Shown here: positions 8,095-59,858 of the stretch, piece by piece
Layout: each line of letters begins with the position of its first letter
Position numbering within the stretch: the stretch's first letter is position 1
DNA from: Lytechinus pictus
Taxonomy: Eukaryota
Length of the DNA stretch: 64,000 nt
Reading direction: 5' to 3'
NCBI RefSeq assembly: GCF_037042905.1
Contig: NC_087256.1
Coordinates: forward strand, 24,366,001-24,430,000
Notes under the pieces: generated by a model
Seen by the model: the letters and a program-made list of their open reading frames with translations, nothing else
What the model was told of the DNA's origin: nothing
Database searches by the model: none
Position numbers and translations under genes: made by a program

Positions 8095-8680
8095 GGACGG
8101 ATGGTCAGTTGGTTTCGTGATTGGGTTGCTGGTTGGTTATGGTTAGATGAATAGTTAAGATAGATGTTTGGATGGTAGATAAACGGATAGTCAGTTGGTT
8201 TCGTGGTTGGGTTGCTGGTTGGTTATGGTTCAATGAATAGTCATGTTTGGATGGTAGATAGACAGATGGTCAGTTGGTTTCGTGGTTGGGTTGCTGGTTG
8301 GTTATGGTTAGATGAATGGTTAAGATGGATGTTTGGATGGTAGATAAACGGATAGTCAGTTGGTTTCGTGGTTGGGTTGCTGATTGGTTATGGTTATATG
8401 AATAGTCATGTTTGGATGGTAGATAGACAGATGGTCAGTTGGTTTCGTGGCTGGGTTGCTGGTTGGTTATGGTTGTATGAATAATTAAGATAGATGTTTG
8501 GATGGTAGATAGACGGATAGTCAGTTGGTTTCGTGGTTGGGTTGCTGGTTGGTTATGGTTGTATGAATAATTAAGATAGATGTTTGGATGGTAGATAGAC
8601 GGATTGTCAGTTGGTTTAGTGGTTGCTGATTGGTTTTGTGGTTAGGTGAATATTTAAGTTAGATGGCTGGATGACAGAGA
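8095..8680. repeat. 86/79-bp minisatellite within a (TTGG)-rich low-complexity tract (~7780-9310)
   Basis: GTCAGTTGGTTT recurs at 8104, 8190, 8269, 8355, 8434, 8520 and 8606. Confidence 0.9.
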
Positions 8681-24589: not shown

Positions 24590-25320
24590 GCCAAGTTGAC
24601 TTAAAAAAACTGATTTGCCGTCATGTTGGTATATGATATCTTGTGCAGTCGACTTCTAAAAAAGGTGCATGTCGTCATTGAGACATATTAAGGTATCACG
24701 ACAAGTCGACTTCGAAGTATTTAAATGTCGTCATGAAGACAGTTTAAGGTATCACCATGACAAGTCGACTTCTAAAATGTTACATGGCGTCATGAAGGCA
24801 TTAAATACCATGGAAAGTCGACTTCTAAAATGTTACATGGTGCCATGAAGACATATATGGCAAGTCGACTTCTAAAGACTGATTTGTCGTCATGGTGACA
24901 TATGATATATTGCCAAGTCGACATCTAAATTGTAACATGTCGTCATCAAGACTTAAGGTATCTTGTGCAGTCGACTTCTAAAAAAGGTGCATGTCGTCAT
25001 TGAGACATATTAAGGTATCACGACAAGTCGACTTCGAAGTATTTAAATGTCGTCATGAAGACAGTTTAAGGTATCACCATGACAAGTCGACTTCTAAAAT
25101 GTTACATGGCGTCATGAAGGCATTAAATACCATGGAAAGTCGACTTCTAAAATGTTACATGGTGCCATGAAGACATATATGGCAAGTCGACTTCTAAAGA
25201 CTGACTTGTCGTCATGATGACATATGATGTATTGCCAAGTCGACTTCTAAATTGTAACATGTCGTCATGAAGACATAGTAAGGTATCACGCCAAGGCGAC
25301 TTCTAAGAATGTTGACCATG
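24590..25320. repeat. ~54-bp minisatellite with a 322-bp higher-order repeat
   Basis: GTCGAC cores are spaced 57,59,53,47,53,53 and then 57,59,53,47,53,56. Confidence 0.9.
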
Positions 25321-47500: not shown

Positions 47501-49219
47501 TGACAGTGGGGGAAGGGGCATGCTTGTCGAGATTGAATTTCATTTGAAAATTAAAAGTGTTTCTCACCAAGGCGAACTTCTACTTCAAGCTAATTACGGA
47601 GCTGCAACTCTCTTTAGTTGGTTCGAGATTCGACCCACGAACCTCATATACAGAGAACGAATGATCAATAACCAGGTAACATAATGGTATACGATGTCAA
47701 TTATGGACGAATTTTTCTCTTTTATTATGTCTATTTATCGTATGGTTGACATCACAATGAGGCAAAATTTGATTGCATGGTGACTTCTTAAAAAAAATCC
47801 TAAGTTTGGGATTTTTAAGGGGAAGGTAACACTTATGCTGGATTTTCCCCAACAAATATGATTTTTGAATCTTGTAAGAATGATGGTTGAGTGAACAGGA
47901 ATTGTAAATTTAGTGTAGCCTATTCATCTTGTAGACCTAAGCAGTGTGTTTTGTGAGTCGGAGTAATGTGATGGTACCTTTTACAAGCGAGAGGGCGAGA
48001 TATGGTAAGACTTGGTTGAAAGGGCATTCATCATCTTTTTGTCATTTTACAAATAAAATTCTTATGTATCTCCACCCCCCCCTCAATTTCCCAGACCCCT
48101 CTCACTTCCTGGATGGTAGCCTATTCAAAACTTATTTGCCACTGAAGTGACCAGTGGCTGATAGTCATATTTTTCTTCTTTTTATTGAATGATTACCAAG
48201 AAATTGACTTGATTATAATTTATGAAATACTTTATTGAAAAACTGAATATTTGATTGATTACATTGCCCATTGAAATAGTTGATTTATTGATAAATTGTT
48301 GATTGATAGGAAAAGTTGATGCCCCAATTATCATTATAATTAAATTAACATTCTGCTCTGGACTTCACGCGTACATGACAATAAAAATCTCACCCCCTAT
48401 TTTCCTGACTCCAATGAACACATTGCTGAGAGCCACATGATAATGTTGAAATGTTGCCCAAGATGTGTAATTTTGTGTAATTTTTGTTCAATTTAATAAT
48501 TCATGAAACTTGCTTAAACATTCATAACTGGTTGATCAATAATTTATCACAACGCCCTTAACATTGCAAGTTCCAAAGCCAAATTATTTGCCCCTCAAAA
48601 ACTGACAAAAAATGGAAGGCTAATTCCAGCCCAGCATAATTATCATACCATTTGTTTCAGTAAGCAGTGTTCGCTCAATCGTGATAGTATTTCAACTTTT
48701 TGGTGTCATATGAAAGTTGATTTTAATGGCTTCCATAACATGTAAGTCTTTCCCCCCAAAGTGATATCTTTTTTATTTGGCAGCCATTTCAAAAGTGTAT
48801 AGTTTTTTGTGGGGGCGCACTGTGGTAGTAGAAGGGAATAGTTATAATGCCCGTAAAAGAAAAAAATTATAAAATAACCAGAGAACCAAATAAACGAAAA
48901 ATCCATACTCCACAACCCGAGCCTCAAAATAGAGGCTCTTCAAAAGTCCGGCAAATGCAGAACTTGCTCTTGTACAAGTGACTCGACCCTGGCCTGGTAC
49001 TTCTCCAATACCCAGTAGAGTCGAGACGACGCGTCGCGACGGTTGGCCGTGGATCTACCGGTGGTCAACAGGATATAGTGAGATCCAATGCCATCAAGAG
49101 GTCAAAAGGCCAATGATACGAATCCATAGGGTTCTATAACGATGACCCAAAGGACAATCGCCCCCTGACATCTACTTCAAGGAAAATATTATCCCCATAT
49201 TTTTGTCGTCAGGGACTGT

Positions 49220-49850
49220 TACCCCCTCCCCCCTTACTCTCTTTTTTTCTTCTCTTTTCCTCTCTTCCTCTCTCTCTCTCTTTCTTTTCTTATCTTTCTT
49301 CCCATCTTCCTCTCTCTTTAAATATTATTCTCTTCCTTCCTCTTTTTTTCTTCTTCTTTTCCCCCTTTTCCTTATTCTGTTCTTTTCTTTCTTTTCCCTC
49401 TTCCACTTTTTTCTCTTTCCCCCTTTACTTCTCCCTTTTTATTTTTCTTTCCTTTCCCTCTTTTTTCTCTTTTAATTGTTTTTTCTTCTCTCCCTCCCCT
49501 TCCTCCCTCTCTCTCTCTCTTTCTTCTCTTCTTTCCCCTCTTCCTCTCTCTCTCTTTTTTCTTATCTTTCTTCCCATCTTCCTCTCTATTTAAATATTCT
49601 TCTCTTCCTTCCTCTTCTTTTTCCTCCTTTTCCTTTCTCCTTTCTTTTCTTCTTTTCCTTTTCCCTCCTCTTTTTTTACTCTTCTTTCCCCTTTTCTTCT
49701 CCATTTTTTTTTTTGTCTTTCCTTTCCCCTTTTTCTTCTCTTTTTTTCTTCTCTTCCTTTCTCCTTCTTACTCTCTTTTCTATTCTCTTCTTTTCCCATC
49801 TTCCTCTTTTTTTATTCTCTCCCTTTTCCCCTCTTCCCCCCCTCTTTTTT
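49220..49850. repeat. Polypyrimidine tract with internal duplication, flanked by ~55-bp inverted repeats (49084-49137 / 49911-49966)
   Basis: CT-rich tract; ...ggccaatgatacgaatccatagggttctat versus atagaaccccatggcctcgtatcatttgacc.... Confidence 0.8.
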
Positions 49851-49993
49851 GAGCTGGGGGTGGGGGGGGTGAGGCAGTTCCCCCTCGGCCCCCCCATGGA
49901 TCCGCACCTGATAGAACCCCATGGCCTCGTATCATTTGACCTTTGGACCTCTCGATGACATTTGATATATCTGATCATAATTTTACACACACT

Positions 49994-50150
49994 GCGGACT
50001 ATCGGACCCGCGGTCTATCGGACCCGCGGTCTATCGGACCCGCGGTCTATCGGACCCGCGGTCTATCGGACCCGCGGTCTATCGGACCCGCGGTCTATCG
50101 GACCCGCGGTCTAACGGACCCGCGGTCTATCGGAGCCGCGGTCTATCGGG
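49994..50150. repeat. 16-bp tandem repeat (GCGGTCTATCGGACCC)x10
   Basis: Near-perfect units read directly; CpG-rich. Confidence 0.95.
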
Positions 50151-51469: not shown

Positions 51470-54340
51470 CCTTGATACGATTTGTCACCTTCAAACAATC
51501 TTAAAAGATGTCCTGATAGATCGCAAATAATTATGAAAGGCTACCAACTGACTTCTATTTTGTCTTATTTACGTTTCCAACTTGTCGAGAAAATGCATCT
51601 TTAATATTTCTTAACGGATAACAGGGGATCATAACGAAAGGTATATCAAATCTATTTTAACTTGTTGACCCCTAAAAACAGCTTTAAAACATGTTGTGAT
51701 AGATCGCACACCCATTTGAGACGTTTGTGACTTCTATTGTTTTATTTACGTTTCCAACATCGTCAAGAAAAGACGTATTTAATATTTCTTAACGGAGAAC
51801 AAGGGATCATAACGAAAGGTATATCAAATCTATTTTAACTTGTTGACCCCTAAAAACAGCTTTAAAACATGTTGTGATAGATCACACACCCATTTGAGAC
51901 GTTTGTGACTTCTATTGTTTTATTTACGTTTCCAACATCGTCAAGAAAAGACGTATTTAATATTTCTTAACGGAGAACAAGGGATCATAACGAAAGGTAT
52001 ATCAAATCTATTTTAACTTGTTGACACCTAAAAACAATTTTAAAACATGTCCTGATATAGATCGCACACCCATCTGAGATGTGTTTGACTTCTATTCTGT
52101 TTTATTTACGTTTCCAACATCGTCAAGAAAAGACGTATTTAATATTTCTTAACGGAGAACAAGGGATCATAACGAAAGGTATATCAAATCTATTTTAACT
52201 TGTTGACCCCTGGAAAATTTTTCAATCATGCCCTGATAGATCGCACACCCATCTGAGATGTTTGTGACTTTTATTTTGTTTTATTTACGTTTCCAACATC
52301 GTCGAGAAAAGACGTATTTAATATTTCTTAACGGAGAACAAGGGATCATAACGAAAGGTATATCAAATCTATTTTAACTTGTTGACACCTAAAAACAATT
52401 TTAAAACATGTCCTGATAGATCGCACACCCATCTGAGATGTTTGTGACTTCTATTTTGTTTTATCTACGTTTCCAACATCGTCGAGAAAAGACGCATTTA
52501 ATATCTCTTAACGGAGAACAAGGGATCATAACGAAAGGTATATCAAATCTATTTTAACTTGTTGACACCTAAAAACAATTTTAAAACATGTCCTGATAGA
52601 TCGCACACCCATCTGAGATGTTTGTGACTTCTATTTTGTTTTATCTACGTTTCCAACATCGTCGAGAAAAGACGCATTTAATATCTCTTAACGGAGAACA
52701 AGGGATCACAACGAAAGGTATATCAAATATAATTTAACTTGTTGACACCTAAAAACAATTTTAAAACGTGTCCTGATAGATCGCACACCAATTTGAGATG
52801 TTTTATTTACGTTTCCAACATCGTCGAGAAAAGACGTATTTAATATTTCTTAACGGAGAACAAGGGATCATAACGAAAGGTATATCAAATCTATTTTAAC
52901 TTGTTGACACCTAAAAACAATTTTAAAACATGTCCTGATAGATCGCACACCCATCTGAGATGTTTGTGACTTCTATTTTGTTTTATCTACGTTTCCAACA
53001 TCGTCGAGAAAGACCTATTTAATATTTCTTAACGGAGAACAAGGGATCACAACGAAAGGTATATCAAATATAATTTAACTTGTTGACACCTAAAAACAAT
53101 TTAAAAACATGTCCTGATAGATCGCACACCCATCTGAGATGTTTGTGACTTCTATTCTGTTTTATTTACGTTTCCAACATCGTCAAGAAAAGACGTATTT
53201 AATATTTCTTAACGGAGAACAAGGGATCATAACGAAAGGTATATCAAATCTATTTTAACTTGTTGACACCTAAAAACAATTTTAAAACATGTCCTGATAG
53301 ATCGCACACCCATCTGAGATGTGTTTGACTTCTATTCTGTTTTATTTACGTTTCCAACATCGTCGAGAAAAGACCTATTTAATATTTCTTTACGGAGAAC
53401 AGGGGATCATAACGGAAGGTATATCAAATCTATTTTAACTTGTTGACCCCTAAAAACAGCTTTAAAACATGTTGTGATAGATCGCACACCCATTTGAGAC
53501 GTTTGTGACTTCTATTGTTTTATTTACGTTTCCAACATCGTCAAGAAAAGACGTATTTAATATTTCTTAACGGAGAACAAGGGATCATAACGAAAGGTAT
53601 ATCAAATCTATTTCAACTTGTTGACACCTAAAAACAATTTTAAAACATGTCCTGATAGATCGCACACCCATCTGAGATGTGTTTGACTTCTATTCTGTTT
53701 TATTTACGTTTCCAACATCGTCAAGAAAAGACGTATTTAATATTTTTAACGGACAACAAGGGATCAAAACGAAAGGTATATCAAATATATTTTAACTTGT
53801 TGACCCCTCGAAAAATATGTATCACCAATAAATATGAGATGCTACCAACTTCTATTTTGTTTTATCGACGTTTCCAACTTTTTCGAGAAAATGCATCTTT
53901 AATATTTCTTAACGGAGAATAGGGGATCATAACGGAAGGTATATCAAATCTATTTTAACTTGTTGACCCCTAAAAACAGCTTTAAAACATGTTGTGATAG
54001 ATCGCACACCCATCTGAGATGTTTGTGACTTCTATTCTGTTTTATTTACGTTTCCAACATCGTCGAGAAAAGACGTATTTAATATTTCTTAACGGAGAAC
54101 AAGGGATTACAACGAAAGGTATATCAAATATATTTTAACTTGTTGACACCTAAAATCAATTTTAAAACATGTCCTGATAGATCGCAAACTATTCTGAGAT
54201 GTTTGTTACCTCTATTTTGTTTTACTTTCCTTTCGTCAATTACATTTCGTCATGGAGAACGGGAGTTCATAACGAAAGGCATACAAAATATATTTTCACT
54301 CGTTCGCCCCTCAAAACAATTTAAAAGCATGTCCTAATCC
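51470..54340. repeat. ~180-bp tandem satellite, about 16 copies
   Basis: GATAGATCGCACACCCATCTGAGATG...AACGGAGAACAAGGGATCATAACGAAAGGTATATCAAATC recurs at ~178-183-bp spacing. Confidence 0.95.
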
Positions 54341-55329: not shown

Positions 55330-55766
55330 ATGTAACCTGTTTTTATTATTTACATACATGTATATGCGAGCTTCAGTTTCTTATAACTCAATTTTTTGAA
55401 GGACCTATTCTTTGGATAATGTACCATATTCTTTAAAAATATGCCGAACCTTCAATTCATTCAAACATTATTACAAATAACATCTTTCAAGTTTGTATTC
55501 TTAATTTGCTGTATAATTACGCTATTCTGAATTTACGTGTTAATATTTGTTTTCATTTATGTTATCTGTTTTTGGAATATTAATTATTTTTGTCTTTATA
55601 GATGTTGGGTCAACGTTCAATAAGGCTACCTGCTCTTTTTTGTTGGCCCCTCATTCTCATAAATATGTTTTTTGTATGTCATAACAATGTTTTACTTCTA
55701 TATCTTATGTATGTTTTTCATGTTTGTTTGTGTTTTTTTGAGAATGTAAATGAATTGAATTGAATC
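55330..55766 (+). mobile_element. LINE 3'-end fragment
   Basis: Encodes a GPILWDNVP-like motif, followed by an AT-rich 3'UTR and a (TGAAT)n tail. Confidence 0.6.
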
Positions 55767-55838
55767 TATATGCTACTTGTAGACTTTGTGATGCAAATTC
55801 TTTGTCTACATGTATATCTACTTTGATTTCTCTCCCAG

Positions 55839-55971
55839 ATACTACTCCAAAGCGCGTGTTGTCCTACTTCAGTACCAGCACATGCCTTCATTCCACGGTA
55901 TCCATAGAGACTGCAATGAAATCGTCAATGAACTAAGGCTCAAGTTAAGAGAACAGTTCGGGAACAAAGAG
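55839..55971 (+). CDS. VPS51: VPS51 coding exon 5
   Basis: (R)YYSKARVVLLQYQHMPSFHGIHRDCNEIVNELRLKLREQFGNKE; ctcccag acceptor, GTAAAT donor, phase 2/0. Confidence 0.93.
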
Positions 55972-55994
55972 GTAAATGTTCTATCATTCTTAAA

Positions 55995-56275
55995 AGGCTT
56001 AGTCCCACTCCACTTACGGATGCAGAGATGATGTAAAATGGAAAAGAATCTTGCCATCCGTTGGAAAACGTTTTGTATCCGTTGTGTACTCTTGGCATAC
56101 ATGTATCATACGCTCTATATCCATCGAGCATCCATCCACTGTTATTTCATTGTTCGCCCATCTTGTCCATTGTCTGGAGTGGATGAAACCGGATGGAGCC
56201 ACCCCAAAATTTTGCTTGTCCGCTGTATCCGTTATGAATACGTTTTTGTGTCCTTCGGCCAGTGGGACCAGGCCT
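55995..56275. mobile_element. Harbinger-like MITE
   Basis: AGGCTTAGTCCCACT...AGTGGGACCAGGCCT termini with internal ATCCGTT repeats. Confidence 0.7.
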
Positions 56276-56649
56276 TTAGATTATTGGGCAAAAACTTTGC
56301 CGTAATACATGTAAACTTGAATCAAATATTCGCCAAGGTCAAACCAATTTTTTCATGCCAGATTAGGCTACACATCTTTTATAGACCTCTTCTAAGGCAC
56401 ATTTCTCATTTGAACAAAACAGATTTGTGGTCCGAATAGATTGGAATTAAGAAGCAAAGTTATCTGCATTTTGAACTGATTGTAAATAGCACTTCTGTTT
56501 ACACTTTGAGTCGGGTAACCATATTTACCACATCATTACACTTTACTCAGATTGCAAAGTCAACCTGGAATTTTGATTGAAAATTGTTAGATTCTGTGTT
56601 ATTATCTTTGAATTCAATCCTCGATCATATATTAAATTTTATCTACTCT

Positions 56650-57755
56650 GTAATTACTTTTACATAGTTATTATTCCATTGTCTGATGCTAAACAGCTTG
56701 CTTGATGTGTAGATCTGTTGCTTTTAACCAATAATTGTGTTATCACTTTCATACAATATTAATTTCTTAGTCTGATGCCAAACAGCTGGCTTAATGTGTA
56801 GATCTGTTACTTTTAACCAACTATTGTGTAATCAATTTCATACAGTAATTTTTATGGCTAGTCTGATCTAGGCAGAATGTTACACGTGTGTTTAACCAAA
56901 TATTGTGTAATCACTAGTTTCATACAATGATTATTCCCTAGTCTGATGCTATAAAACCGCTAGCTGAATATGTAGATCAGTTTCTTTTAACCAACCATTG
57001 TGTAATCGCTTACAAACAATGATTATTCCCTAGTCTGATGCTAAACAGCTAGCTAAATATGTAAATCAGTTTCTTTTAACCAACCATTGTGTAATCGCTT
57101 ACAAACAATGATTATTCCCTAGTCTGATGCTAAACAGCTAGCTAAATATGTAAATCAGTTTCTTTTAACCAACCATTGTGTAATCACTTTCATACAATGA
57201 TTATTCCCTAGTCTGATGCTAAACAGCTAGCTGAATGTGTAATCTGTTTTTAACCGATGTTGTGTAATCACTTTCATATGAAGATTATTCCCTAGTCTAA
57301 TGCTGAACAGCTATCTGAATATGTAGATCTGTTTCTGTTAACCGACCATTGTGTAATCGCTTACATATACATGTAGTATTTATTTCCTAGTCTGATGCTA
57401 AACAATGTGTAGATCTGTTGCTTTTAACCAACTGTTGTATAATCAATTTCATACAGTAATTATTATGGCTAGTCTGATGCTAAGCAGAATGTTACATATG
57501 TTTTTAACCAACCATTGTGTGATCTTTCATACAATGAATATTCCCTAGTCTGATGCTAAACAGCTAGCTGAATTTGTAGATCTGTTTCTTTTAACCAACC
57601 ATTGTGTCATCATATACGTGTAGTAGTTATTCTCCAGTCTGATGCTAAACAATGTATAGATCTGTTGCTTTTAACCAAATATTGTGTAATCTTTCATACA
57701 ATGATTATTCCCTAGTCTGATGCTAAACAGCTAGCTGAATGTGTAGATTTGTTGC
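56650..57755 (+). repeat. Tandem array (13 units, 76-95 bp) built from the VPS51 exon-6 3' splice site plus the first ~35 nt of the exon
   Basis: Repeated ttattccctag|TCTGATGCTAAACAGCTAGCTGAATGTGTAGAT units; only the last continues into the true exon. Confidence 0.95.
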
Positions 57756-57804
57756 TGCAACTCAAAGAACCACCCGATGAGCTCTTTGATGAGTTTCTTT
57801 CTCA
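57716..57804 (+). CDS. VPS51: VPS51 coding exon 6
   Basis: SDAKQLAECVDLLLQLKEPPDELFDEFLS(H); ccctag acceptor (last unit of a tandem array), GTAAGT donor, phase 0/2. Confidence 0.9.
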
Positions 57805-58551
57805 GTAAGTATGAGTAATGACTTCTTAATGAATTGACAGCTTTAACTATGTAGACACTTTCTTATTATTAGACTTGTTTCTTCAAAGTAACTGTCATTG
57901 TAACTTTCAATATATCTGTAAAGCGCTTAGAGATGTTCCGATGTATTAATCGCTATATAAAAGCAGATTATTATTATTATTATCATCATCATCATCGTCA
58001 GGATCATCGTCATCATCTTTTTCACTTCATATTTCCTTTCTTTTAACCGCTTAGAGGCAATTTGTGGTATACAAAATGATTATTATTATTAATTATTATC
58101 ATCGTCATCATCATCAATCATTATCATTGTGACTTTGCCATTCTATGGTAACAATGCTCAACAACCACTCAAGTCTAGGATTCCAAGGAAGTTACAGATG
58201 GATCTCAAAGGTACCATTATCGTGACTCTTCATTAACAGACCCCAATGGCCCGATGTATGAAATTTTACTATTAAAATCATCACTTCACTGGAAAAATGA
58301 TATTGATTTGTAGGTATTTATTAAAGTATTGTTATCAAGGTAGTTGGCTAGTTGCATTAAAGATACCAAAGTTTCTGTAATAGTAGCTTTTTTAGGAAAT
58401 TGGCAAGAGGTTATATTGTCCGTAAATGATGATATTGGGGATTTTTGGGGAGTGGGTTATGTTTATCTTTATTGAAGGAACGAAATAATTTGTTAATTTC
58501 ATGTAATGAGTGTATTTAGACTAAATTTCGTGTCTGTGAATTCACTGACAG

Positions 58552-58708
58552 TGCCCGACACAAGTTGGATGAGAGTCTGAGGGAGATGTCAAGTCATGTG
58601 AAGACTGGTAGACAGCGGACCGCATCCAGCCCTGAGGAAGATGAGGATGGTGTTAGCAATCAGGAGGGGGAGAGACCCTCTGATAAGATCATGAGGTCAC
58701 TTCCAATG
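58552..58708 (+). CDS. VPS51: VPS51 coding exon 7
   Basis: (H)ARHKLDESLREM...RSLPM; gacag acceptor, GTGAGC donor, phase 2/0 consistent with neighbouring exons. Confidence 0.85.
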
Positions 58709-59858
58709 GTGAGCCTAACTTTTGTTTTGATATGTTTCTCCCTCTGGGCCTCCATATCTTCATCGCTCTGCACATTTCTGTATTGTTGAAATAGAATATT
58801 TGTGTGTGTATTGTGGTGTTTTTTCAATATCCTGTGTTTATTGGCCTCTCTTTAAAGGAGAGGGACATCTCATAGTATACACATAGAATGCACGTAAGCG
58901 CATGCATGCAGGGCTAAATAATGAACGATGTGCGAGAAGAGCCAATGGATATTTGGCGAGTTGAGCACAGAGTTCATTATTTAGGTCCTCTATGCACAAG
59001 AATGCGTGCATTGTTTGTTTTGTACAACCCCCCCATGTTACTGAGTTGCCCCAAATGCTATATTTGATCTAAATTCTAGATAATTCCAGACCTCGCACTA
59101 TCCTGCACTCTGACGTCAGAGTGCAGGATAGTGCATATTGGATGCAATAGTGCAATTCGCTGAATATCATGTGATCCGATTTGGACCAATCAGATCACAG
59201 AACACTCTTGGGAGTTGTATAAAAATATCTGTTTGATCGGGAGACCCAAGAAATGAGACGGATGATGGTTTCAATGTATATAGCAGGTTCTGTCTTATCG
59301 AACATTAATTCAAACATTAACGCGAGTTGTAACATTCTCCATATGAGTTTGAAAAGAATCCAGTAAATTTATATGTGTGAAAAATCATATCTGTCAAATG
59401 ATTGTGGTAGAAAATGCGTAATTACTAAGATATTGAAACAATAAACATGGCTTTCCAGGCAATAAAAGCCTGGTCCCACATGTGGTTATCTGTGTTGGTG
59501 AGGTTCGGTGTGATCATTTTCAGCATAGATTTCATGGATTCAGAGAGTTAGGTTGATGTAGATGAACCTGATCTAGATCAGTGATGAAAGATGACAGTTA
59601 GCCTGAGCTGTAAAGACTTATGTTTGCTGCAGTTGTACTCATCTTCGAGAAGAAAGCTTCCTCAAGAGAAATTATTACAGGAAAATTCTGTGTAATTTGT
59701 AAAACTGTAGTTGCTTCAAAACTCACTCTAATTCCCCCACCCAGGCACAGTACAGGTTGATTTCCAAAGGCTTTCAACTATAAACCCAAAGTTAAAATCT
59801 ACTAAGATCCCTATACAATGCCAACCTCCTATGATAAAGTTGTGTTTTATTCTTTCAG

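What the first reader, a model, noticed from the sequence alone, without database searches (positions are those of the whole stretch)
56650..57804. Array of 12 decoy splice acceptors in front of VPS51 exon 6, none of which can yield a productive mRNA
Seen: the repeat unit is the intron/exon junction itself (~50 nt of intron end + AG + ~35 nt of exon, encoding SDAKQLAECVD-like sequence). Exon-like starts are at 56682, 56771, 56862, 56942, 57034, 57123, 57212, 57296, 57391, 57473, 57549 and 57638, with the real one at 57716. Eleven of the 12 decoys keep AG, several with the same ttattccctag context as the true site. The intron is phase 0 and the true acceptor is TAG, so any upstream choice either frameshifts or meets a stop. 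The nearest decoy adds exactly 26 codons ending in that TAG. Unit pairs 5/6, 3/10 and 9/12 share variants, which suggests unequal crossing-over. The modal unit length (89) equals the exon length (89). Inference: either exon definition robustly picks the last acceptor, or the array is a copy-number-tunable poison-splicing/NMD rheostat or splicing-factor sink on a housekeeping gene.
Basis: partly seen in the sequence, partly recalled or inferred. Interest (0 to 1): 0.85.

Follow-up and report, generated by a model that had tools for sequence, protein, structure and literature searches.

The report
Silent splice-acceptor minisatellite in VPS51 intron
An 89-base piece spanning the intron/exon border of VPS51 exon 6 has been copied in tandem 12 times, but RNA reads show only the last, authentic splice site in use, so this is an ordinary "mirage"-type repeat and not a control device.

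Summary
Tandem Repeats Finder gives an 89-bp period, 12.8 copies, at 56649-57756. Every decoy would give a stop 7-26 codons after the junction. The gene is VPS51.

The regulatory reading (NMD rheostat or splicing-factor sink) is not supported.
- Three stranded, rRNA-depleted RNA-seq runs of the same species label and one contig set join 55971 only to 57716 (24 reads plus a contig).
- No joint to a decoy is listed, and depth over the array is zero apart from one partial read.
- AG retention in the decoys is no better than for other dinucleotides (P=0.065).
- The unit occurs nowhere else in the 812-Mb genome. Minisatellites are common there, about 1 per 24 kb.

This kind of repeat is already described. 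Amphioxus has "mirage" minisatellites at both donor and acceptor borders. Human F7, IFI6, CBS, LMNB2 and PDGFA carry donor-side arrays.

The scan has found the same kind before at other loci of this genome (cubilin, SLC4, WDR11, VPS13). I re-checked the WDR11 array.

Verdict: a tolerated junction minisatellite and a new member of a known kind. Not tested here: low-level decoy use cleared by NMD, copy-number polymorphism, and presence in sister species.

The parts
55839..55971 (+). VPS51 exon 5 (133 nt), ending on a codon boundary; its donor GT is at 55972
   Evidence: Sequence. The translation aligns to residues 175-211 of Sycon ciliatum VPS51. It is covered by RNA reads on the gene strand.
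55972..57715 (+). Intron 5 (1744 nt, phase 0)
   Evidence: A GT..AG joint skipping 1744 nt is seen in 24 reads and one X3 contig.
56649..57756 (+). Junction ('mirage'-type) minisatellite: 89-bp period, 12.8 copies, with the last unit being the real intron 5/exon 6 border
   Evidence: TRF. Unit alignment and identity matrix. The unit is unique to this locus in the genome.
56680..56681 (+). Unit 1 pseudo-acceptor, degenerated to TG
   Evidence: Unit 1 is the most divergent unit, 53-68% identical to the others.
56769..57637 (+). Eleven decoy acceptors with AG intact; exon-like starts at 56771, 56862, 56942, 57034, 57123, 57212, 57296, 57391, 57473, 57549 and 57638
   Evidence: Each gives a premature stop 7-26 codons in. 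No joints to them are listed, and depth is 0 over the array bins 56324-57675 except 0.5 in one X27 bin, 57156-57259.
57714..57715 (+). Authentic acceptor AG of exon 6, the only acceptor seen in use
   Evidence: Joint 55971->57716 in 5+11+8 reads and in an X3 contig of depth 28.6.
57716..57804 (+). VPS51 exon 6 (89 nt). The first ~41 nt are the exonic part of the repeat unit; the rest is unique.
   Evidence: Aligns to residues 219-246 of Sycon VPS51. RNA depth and joints on both sides.
57805..57810 (+). Exon 6 donor GTAAGT, the only 6/6 match to GTRAGT in 56650-57815
   Evidence: Joint 57804->58552 in 18+20+12 reads.
58552..58695 (+). VPS51 exon 7. The start is fixed by RNA joints; the end is approximate.

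Best explanation
This is a junction-spanning ('mirage'-type) minisatellite. An ~89-bp segment, about 48 nt of intron end (branch-point-like motifs, weak pyrimidine tract, AG) plus the first ~41 nt of VPS51 exon 6, was duplicated in tandem. It then grew by replication slippage or unequal exchange, partly in two- or three-unit blocks. Only the last copy is continuous with the rest of the exon. That copy alone is followed by the unique exon body and, 89 nt on, by the only consensus donor, so the splicing machinery pairs it across the exon (exon definition). The upstream copies are silent pseudo-acceptors. Any rare use of one would give a stop within 7-26 codons and should be cleared by nonsense-mediated decay. 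The array is a tolerated by-product of a repeat-rich genome and drifts without constraint on its AGs. Shown here: the array, its uniqueness, the stop codons, and exclusive use of 57716 at the sampled depth. Inferred: the exon-definition mechanism, the mode of growth, and neutrality.
For: The array is real and its units are diverged, 53-100% pairwise. The unit is found only at this locus in the 811.7-Mb genome. All listed exon 5-6 joints, 24 reads in three runs plus one contig, use 57716. No decoy joint is listed. Depth over the array bins 56324-57675 is 0 on both strands, except 0.5 in one bin of X27, even in rRNA-depleted libraries. The true acceptor's upstream 25 nt are identical to those of decoys 4 and 7, and the pyrimidine fraction is 0.50-0.65 in all units. 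The only perfect GTAAGT in the region is at 57805. AG retention (11/12) is unremarkable: P=0.065, and 23 of 77 dinucleotides are kept equally well. Block-wise similarity (5/6, 11/13, 9/12, 3/10, 4/11) and a most-divergent edge unit are typical of minisatellite turnover. Minisatellites are frequent here: 4 in the window and 8 in a 190-kb sample. A second junction array lies about 0.76 Mb away. Published precedents state that such arrays do not disturb splicing: amphioxus mirages (PMC3087553, PMC3902484) and human donor-side arrays (PMC1557585).
Against: Sampling is shallow. With 24 junction reads the 95% upper bound on decoy use in steady-state RNA is about 12%. Joints are listed only from 3 reads upward. 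There was no NMD block, so leak followed by decay is invisible. Exon 5-6 joints (24) are half as many as exon 6-7 joints (50). I attribute this to SNP-dense exon 5 haplotypes at the 92% threshold, but the unlisted loose ends could not be inspected. One partial read lies in unit 6/7 of X27. The core around the junction (-12 to +15) is the best-kept part of the unit, which could reflect something other than chance. Decoys 11 and 12 would make exons of only 256 and 167 nt, so exon definition alone does not fully explain why they are ignored. No DNA reads or sister-species sequence were available.
Confidence: 0.8

Rival explanations
1. Leaky decoys. The pseudo-acceptors are used at a low but real rate, and the products are removed by NMD. 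The array would then impose a small, copy-number-dependent tax on VPS51 output: an unselected cost or, at the extreme, a tunable rheostat.
For: Eleven decoys keep AG with contexts equal to the true site. Every decoy gives a stop well upstream of the next exon junction. One partial read lies in the array in X27, and exon 5-6 joints are fewer than exon 6-7 joints. In human IFI6 and CBS, the first two pseudo-donors of such arrays are used (PMC1557585).
Against: No decoy joint is listed and depth is zero over the array bins in three runs and in X3 contigs. There is no excess conservation of AG. The same kind of array sits in unrelated genes, which argues against a VPS51-specific device.
Confidence: 0.14
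2. Functional intronic element. The array acts as a sink for U2AF/branch-point factors, or as decoy exons that hold the intron back (regulated intron retention or detention).
For: There are many complete 3' splice-site modules in a row. The core of the unit around the junction is its best-conserved part.
Against: rRNA-depleted RNA shows no retained intron 5: depth is 0 from 56324 to 57675 apart from one partial read in X27 (bin 57156-57259), while the exons stand at 10-20x. There is no Rfam match. Nothing distinguishes this array from other minisatellites of the genome.
Confidence: 0.03
3. Assembly artefact. The array, or its copy number, was created by mis-assembly of a shorter repeat.
For: Units 5 and 6 are identical over 89 bp, so the count could be off by one. 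No DNA run of this species covering the intron was found. In amphioxus, one mirage was mis-assembled in the draft genome (PMC3087553).
Against: The other units differ by 10-47% from one another and carry unit-specific indels, which assembly errors do not produce. The assembly is chromosome-scale, with 368 contigs and the host contig at 32 Mb.
Confidence: 0.03

Closest known systems
Amphioxus 'mirage' minisatellites (Adh3, globin BflGb6/BflGb9, troponin C, PGBD5), described in PMC3087553 and PMC3902484, which cite Canestro et al. 2002 (NAR)
   Same: Both are tandem arrays whose unit spans an exon-intron border. BflGb6 copies the 3' end of an intron plus the 5' part of the exon, exactly as here. 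Many copies keep AG/GT, yet regular splicing is not disturbed. Interior units are homogenised and edge units are divergent.
   Different: The host is a different phylum: an earlier scan note says sea urchin, which I did not verify. This array has more and older copies (12 units at 53-100% identity, versus 3-6 units at 81-100% in BflGb6). Length or somatic instability, shown for Adh3, was not testable here.
Human F7 intron 7 37-bp VNTR and other donor-side junction minisatellites (IFI6/6-16, CBS, LMNB2, PDGFA), PMC1557585
   Same: The minisatellite's terminal unit is the authentic junction. Reiterated pseudo-sites are identical or near-identical to the real one. The exon-adjacent site wins. F7, LMNB2 and PDGFA use only the authentic site.
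   Different: Those arrays repeat 5' splice sites downstream of the exon, whereas this one repeats 3' splice sites upstream of it. The 5'-to-3' scanning proposed for F7 cannot explain choice of the last acceptor. In IFI6 and CBS the two nearest pseudo-sites are used, and nothing comparable is seen here.
Regulated unproductive splicing (poison exons or poison acceptors coupled to NMD)
   Same: Each decoy acceptor would introduce a premature stop upstream of an exon junction.
   Different: No use of the poison sites was detected. There is no evidence of conservation or regulation. The decoys are by-products of a repeat, not a single conserved element.
Other junction minisatellites in this same genome noted by the scan (cubilin, SLC4, WDR11, VPS13)
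   Same: They share the same architecture. I re-checked the WDR11 one: L007:3727-4557, period 129, 6.4 copies, with the last unit running into an open frame that ends at a GT donor.
   Different: Genes and units are unrelated, so these are independent events.

Membership tests
Junction-spanning ('mirage') minisatellite | Head-to-tail tandem array with a minisatellite-size unit | tested here: met
   TRF: period 89, 12.8 copies, score 1006.
Junction-spanning ('mirage') minisatellite | The unit contains an exon-intron border, and one terminal unit is the authentic junction of a real exon | tested here: met
   The units hold about 48 nt of intron, the AG, and about 41 nt of exon 6. Exon 6 aligns to VPS51 residues 219-246 and is spliced at 57716 in RNA.
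Junction-spanning ('mirage') minisatellite | Regular splicing at the authentic site; copies silent | tested here: met
   24 reads and one contig use 57716. No decoy joint is listed and array depth is 0 apart from one partial read. Sensitivity limit is roughly 10%.
Junction-spanning ('mirage') minisatellite | Turnover pattern of tandem repeats: homogenised interior units, divergent edge unit | tested here: met
   Units 5/6 are 97-100% identical. Block pairs 11/13, 9/12, 3/10 and 4/11 are present. Edge unit 1 is the most divergent and has lost its AG.
Junction-spanning ('mirage') minisatellite | Copy-number instability between haplotypes or individuals | not testable with these tools
NMD-coupled regulated unproductive splicing | The alternative site introduces a premature stop | tested here: met
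   All 12 decoys give a stop 7-26 codons in, 89-1099 nt before the exon 6 donor.
NMD-coupled regulated unproductive splicing | The alternative site is detectably used in RNA | tested here: not met
   No joint to any decoy is listed in X27, X28, X29 or X3.
NMD-coupled regulated unproductive splicing | Selective conservation of the poison sites | tested here: not met
   AG is kept in 11/12 units, P=0.065 at the mean site identity of 0.825, and 23 of 77 dinucleotides are kept as well. Cross-species conservation could not be tested.
Decoy-exon-mediated intron retention | The host intron is retained in a fraction of transcripts | tested here: not met
   Depth is 0 from 56324 to 57675, apart from 0.5 in one X27 bin, in rRNA-depleted stranded RNA-seq, while the flanking exons stand at about 10-20x.
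VPS51 (GARP/EARP subunit) gene | Vps51/Exo84/COG1 N-terminal domain, and collinear similarity to named VPS51 proteins | tested here: met
   PF08700 on exon 2 scores 44.1 bits against a cutoff of 24.2. Exons 5 and 6 align in order to Sycon ciliatum 'vacuolar protein sorting-associated protein 51 homolog'.

The most novel reading that the evidence does not exclude
The decoy array is a copy-number-variable expression modifier. A fraction of VPS51 pre-mRNA is spliced to decoy acceptors and destroyed by NMD, so alleles with more units yield less productive VPS51 mRNA. A broader variant of this idea is that junction-spanning minisatellites are over-represented in this genome because of a junction-linked mutational process. 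My rough estimate (about 34,000 arrays genome-wide, with a few percent expected to include a junction by chance) does not require that.
Probability: 0.06. Interest if true: 0.6.

Novelty: new member of a known kind. Interest (0 to 1): 0.25.

Why it matters
It matters mainly as a natural experiment. Eleven near-identical 3' splice sites sit upstream of the authentic one, some with the same 25 nt of intron, and the cell ignores them. That makes the locus a ready substrate for asking what, beyond the local signal, picks an acceptor. It is the acceptor-side counterpart of the human F7 donor array, which was used to argue for oriented scanning. It also extends 'mirage' repeats beyond amphioxus, and it warns gene predictors that such arrays can seed false exon starts. 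It does not point to a new regulatory mechanism.

Tried and rejected
1. Dispersed-element origin: rejected. The unit matches only its own locus in the genome. By contrast, the 285-bp element at 55993-56278 has more than 1000 candidate copies.
2. Structured or known RNA in the array: no Rfam match near significance.
3. Decoy mini-exons: the array has only 5/6 donor-like sites. Unit 12 plus a GTAATC site could give an in-frame 48-nt exon, but no read lies there.
4. Recursive splicing: the junction does not regenerate a GT donor, by reading the sequence.
5. Selection on decoy AGs: not supported.
6. Orthologous locus in relatives:
   - phmmer with exon 1 returned mostly short fragments.
   - A word search with the exon 5 ORF found two relatives' ORFs, P0116 and P0117.
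   - Their contigs came without DNA, so age and conservation stay unknown.
7. PDB sequence search with exons 1 and 5: no hits.
8. DNA runs of the species: none found. Holders with small shares are probably a relative's copies of the dispersed repeat or of the exons.
9. Canestro et al. 2002 (PMC117041) is not held, so it is cited only through PMC3087553.

Full report
**1. What is there**

The + strand of 40.4-64 kb carries a VPS51 gene.
- Exon 2 matches Pfam PF08700 (Vps51/Exo84/COG1 N-terminal) at 44.1 bits, against a cutoff of 24.2.
- Exons 5 and 6 align in order to residues 175-211 and 219-246 of a protein named 'vacuolar protein sorting-associated protein 51 homolog' of the sponge Sycon ciliatum.
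- Exon 6 is therefore ancient, and the repeat derives from it, not the reverse.
- Coordinates: exon 5 is 55839-55971, intron 5 is 55972-57715 (phase 0), exon 6 is 57716-57804 (89 nt) with donor GTAAGT at 57805, and exon 7 starts at 58552.

**2.

- Tandem Repeats Finder reports one array at 56649-57756: period 89, 12.8 copies, 75% matches.
Eleven are preceded by AG and unit 1 by TG.
- Units 4-8 have the same last 11 intron bases as the real site.
- Joined to exon 5, every decoy gives a stop after 7-26 codons. The nearest decoy (57638) adds 26 codons ending in the TAG of the real acceptor.
- The pairs 5/6, 3/10 and 9/12 are confirmed. 11/13 (90%) and 4/11 (79%) are added, so the array grew partly by two- or three-unit blocks, and the authentic unit itself took part in that turnover.
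- One refinement: RNA reads carry C at 57749, the state of the decoy units, so exon/unit homology runs to about +41.

**3. Is it used?**

One lay of reads on 55700-58800 used three stranded, rRNA-depleted RNA-seq runs of the same species label (about 1.3 Gb read from each) and one set of contigs identical to the reference in the exons.
- The joint 55971->57716 is seen in 5, 11 and 8 reads and in a contig of depth 28.6.
- The joint 57804->58552 is seen in 18, 20 and 12 reads.
- No joint to any decoy is listed.
- Depth over the array bins 56324-57675 is 0 on both strands in all runs, except 0.5 in one bin of X27, which is one partial read. There is thus no intron retention either.

Limits of this test:
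- With 24 reads the 95% upper bound on decoy use is about 12%.
- Joints need 3 reads to be listed.
- NMD was not blocked.
- The lower count at exon 5-6 probably reflects up to 11 third-position SNPs in exon 5 at the 92% threshold, but the unlisted loose ends could not be seen.

**4. Why the last site?**

- Local signals do not distinguish it. The true acceptor shares its upstream 25 nt with decoys 4 and 7, and all units have a weak pyrimidine tract (0.50-0.65) and the same branch-point-like motifs.
- What is unique to the last copy is what follows it: the non-repeated exon body and the only perfect GTAAGT in 56650-57815.
- I infer exon definition, with NMD as a backstop. This is inference. It does not fully explain why decoys 11 and 12, which would give exons of 256 and 167 nt, are ignored.

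**5. Selection or drift?**

- AG retention in 11 of 12 decoys has P=0.065 at the mean site identity of 0.825, even assuming independent units. 23 of 77 adjacent dinucleotides are kept equally well.
- The edge unit is the most diverged and has lost its AG.
- The unit occurs nowhere else in the 811.7-Mb genome, so it is a local duplication and not a mobile element.
- Minisatellites are common: four in this window and eight in 190 kb sampled from three chromosomes. That is about one per 24 kb, or some 34,000 genome-wide.
- If a few percent of founding segments include a splice junction by chance, hundreds of such arrays are expected. This is my rough estimate, not a measurement.

**6. What is known**

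[quoted passage not shown] One example (BflGb6) copies the intron 3' end plus the exon 5' part. They are reported not to interfere with regular splicing (PMC3087553; PMC3902484).
- The mirror case at donors is known in human F7, IFI6, CBS, LMNB2 and PDGFA. [quoted passage not shown]
- Notes of this scan list the same architecture at other genes of this genome (cubilin, SLC4, WDR11, VPS13), and one note calls the species the painted sea urchin. I did not verify the species.
- I did re-check the WDR11 note. L007:3727-4557 is a 129-bp x 6.4 array whose last unit runs into an open frame ending at a GT donor.
- I found no paper reporting such arrays in sea urchins within the held library.

**7. Verdict**

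This is a real, well-described structure of a known kind and most likely a tolerated by-product of minisatellite formation. The rheostat or sink idea is not excluded at low levels but has nothing in its favour. Its value is as a natural substrate for studying acceptor choice.

Noticed in passing
window 55993-56278: A ~285-bp dispersed repeat sits inside intron 5. It has more than 1000 candidate copies in the genome at about 90% identity. It is heavily covered by RNA reads on both strands, with loose ends at both borders, so the reads come from other copies.
   Followed up: partly
window 51549-54224: A 180-bp x 15.1 tandem array (89% matches) sits in VPS51 intron 4. It is the largest minisatellite of the window.
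   Followed up: no
window 57884-57987: A stretch of intron 6 is covered at about 2-10x on the gene strand in all three RNA runs. Most reads carry an extra CG after 57933. It is probably another repeat family or a divergent allele.
   Followed up: no
window 55848-55962: Eleven SNPs in exon 5, all at third codon positions, appear in runs X27 and X28 (up to about 8% of the exon). This indicates very high synonymous diversity or deeply diverged haplotypes, and it likely lowers the exon 5-6 joint counts at the 92% threshold.
   Followed up: partly
window 57749: The reference has T (TTG Leu). All reads of X27 and X28 and half of those of X29 have C (CTG Leu), which is also the state of the decoy units. 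The reference allele therefore looks derived.
   Followed up: partly
L007:3727-4557 (G000:C12:25191727-25192557): A second junction minisatellite lies about 0.76 Mb downstream: 129-bp unit, 6.4 copies, each with an acceptor-like AAG followed by GTACGT. The last unit continues into an open frame ending at a GT donor. A scan note calls the gene WDR11.
   Followed up: partly
window 57638-57691: Decoy 12 plus a GTAATC site 48 nt downstream could form an in-frame, stop-free 16-codon micro-exon. No RNA read supports it.
   Followed up: yes
window 8096-8673, 24637-25313, 49117-50149: Further repeats: a G/T-skewed 86-bp x 6.3 array, a 53/322-bp array, a long CT-rich low-complexity tract, and a 16-mer x 9.8 array.
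   Followed up: no
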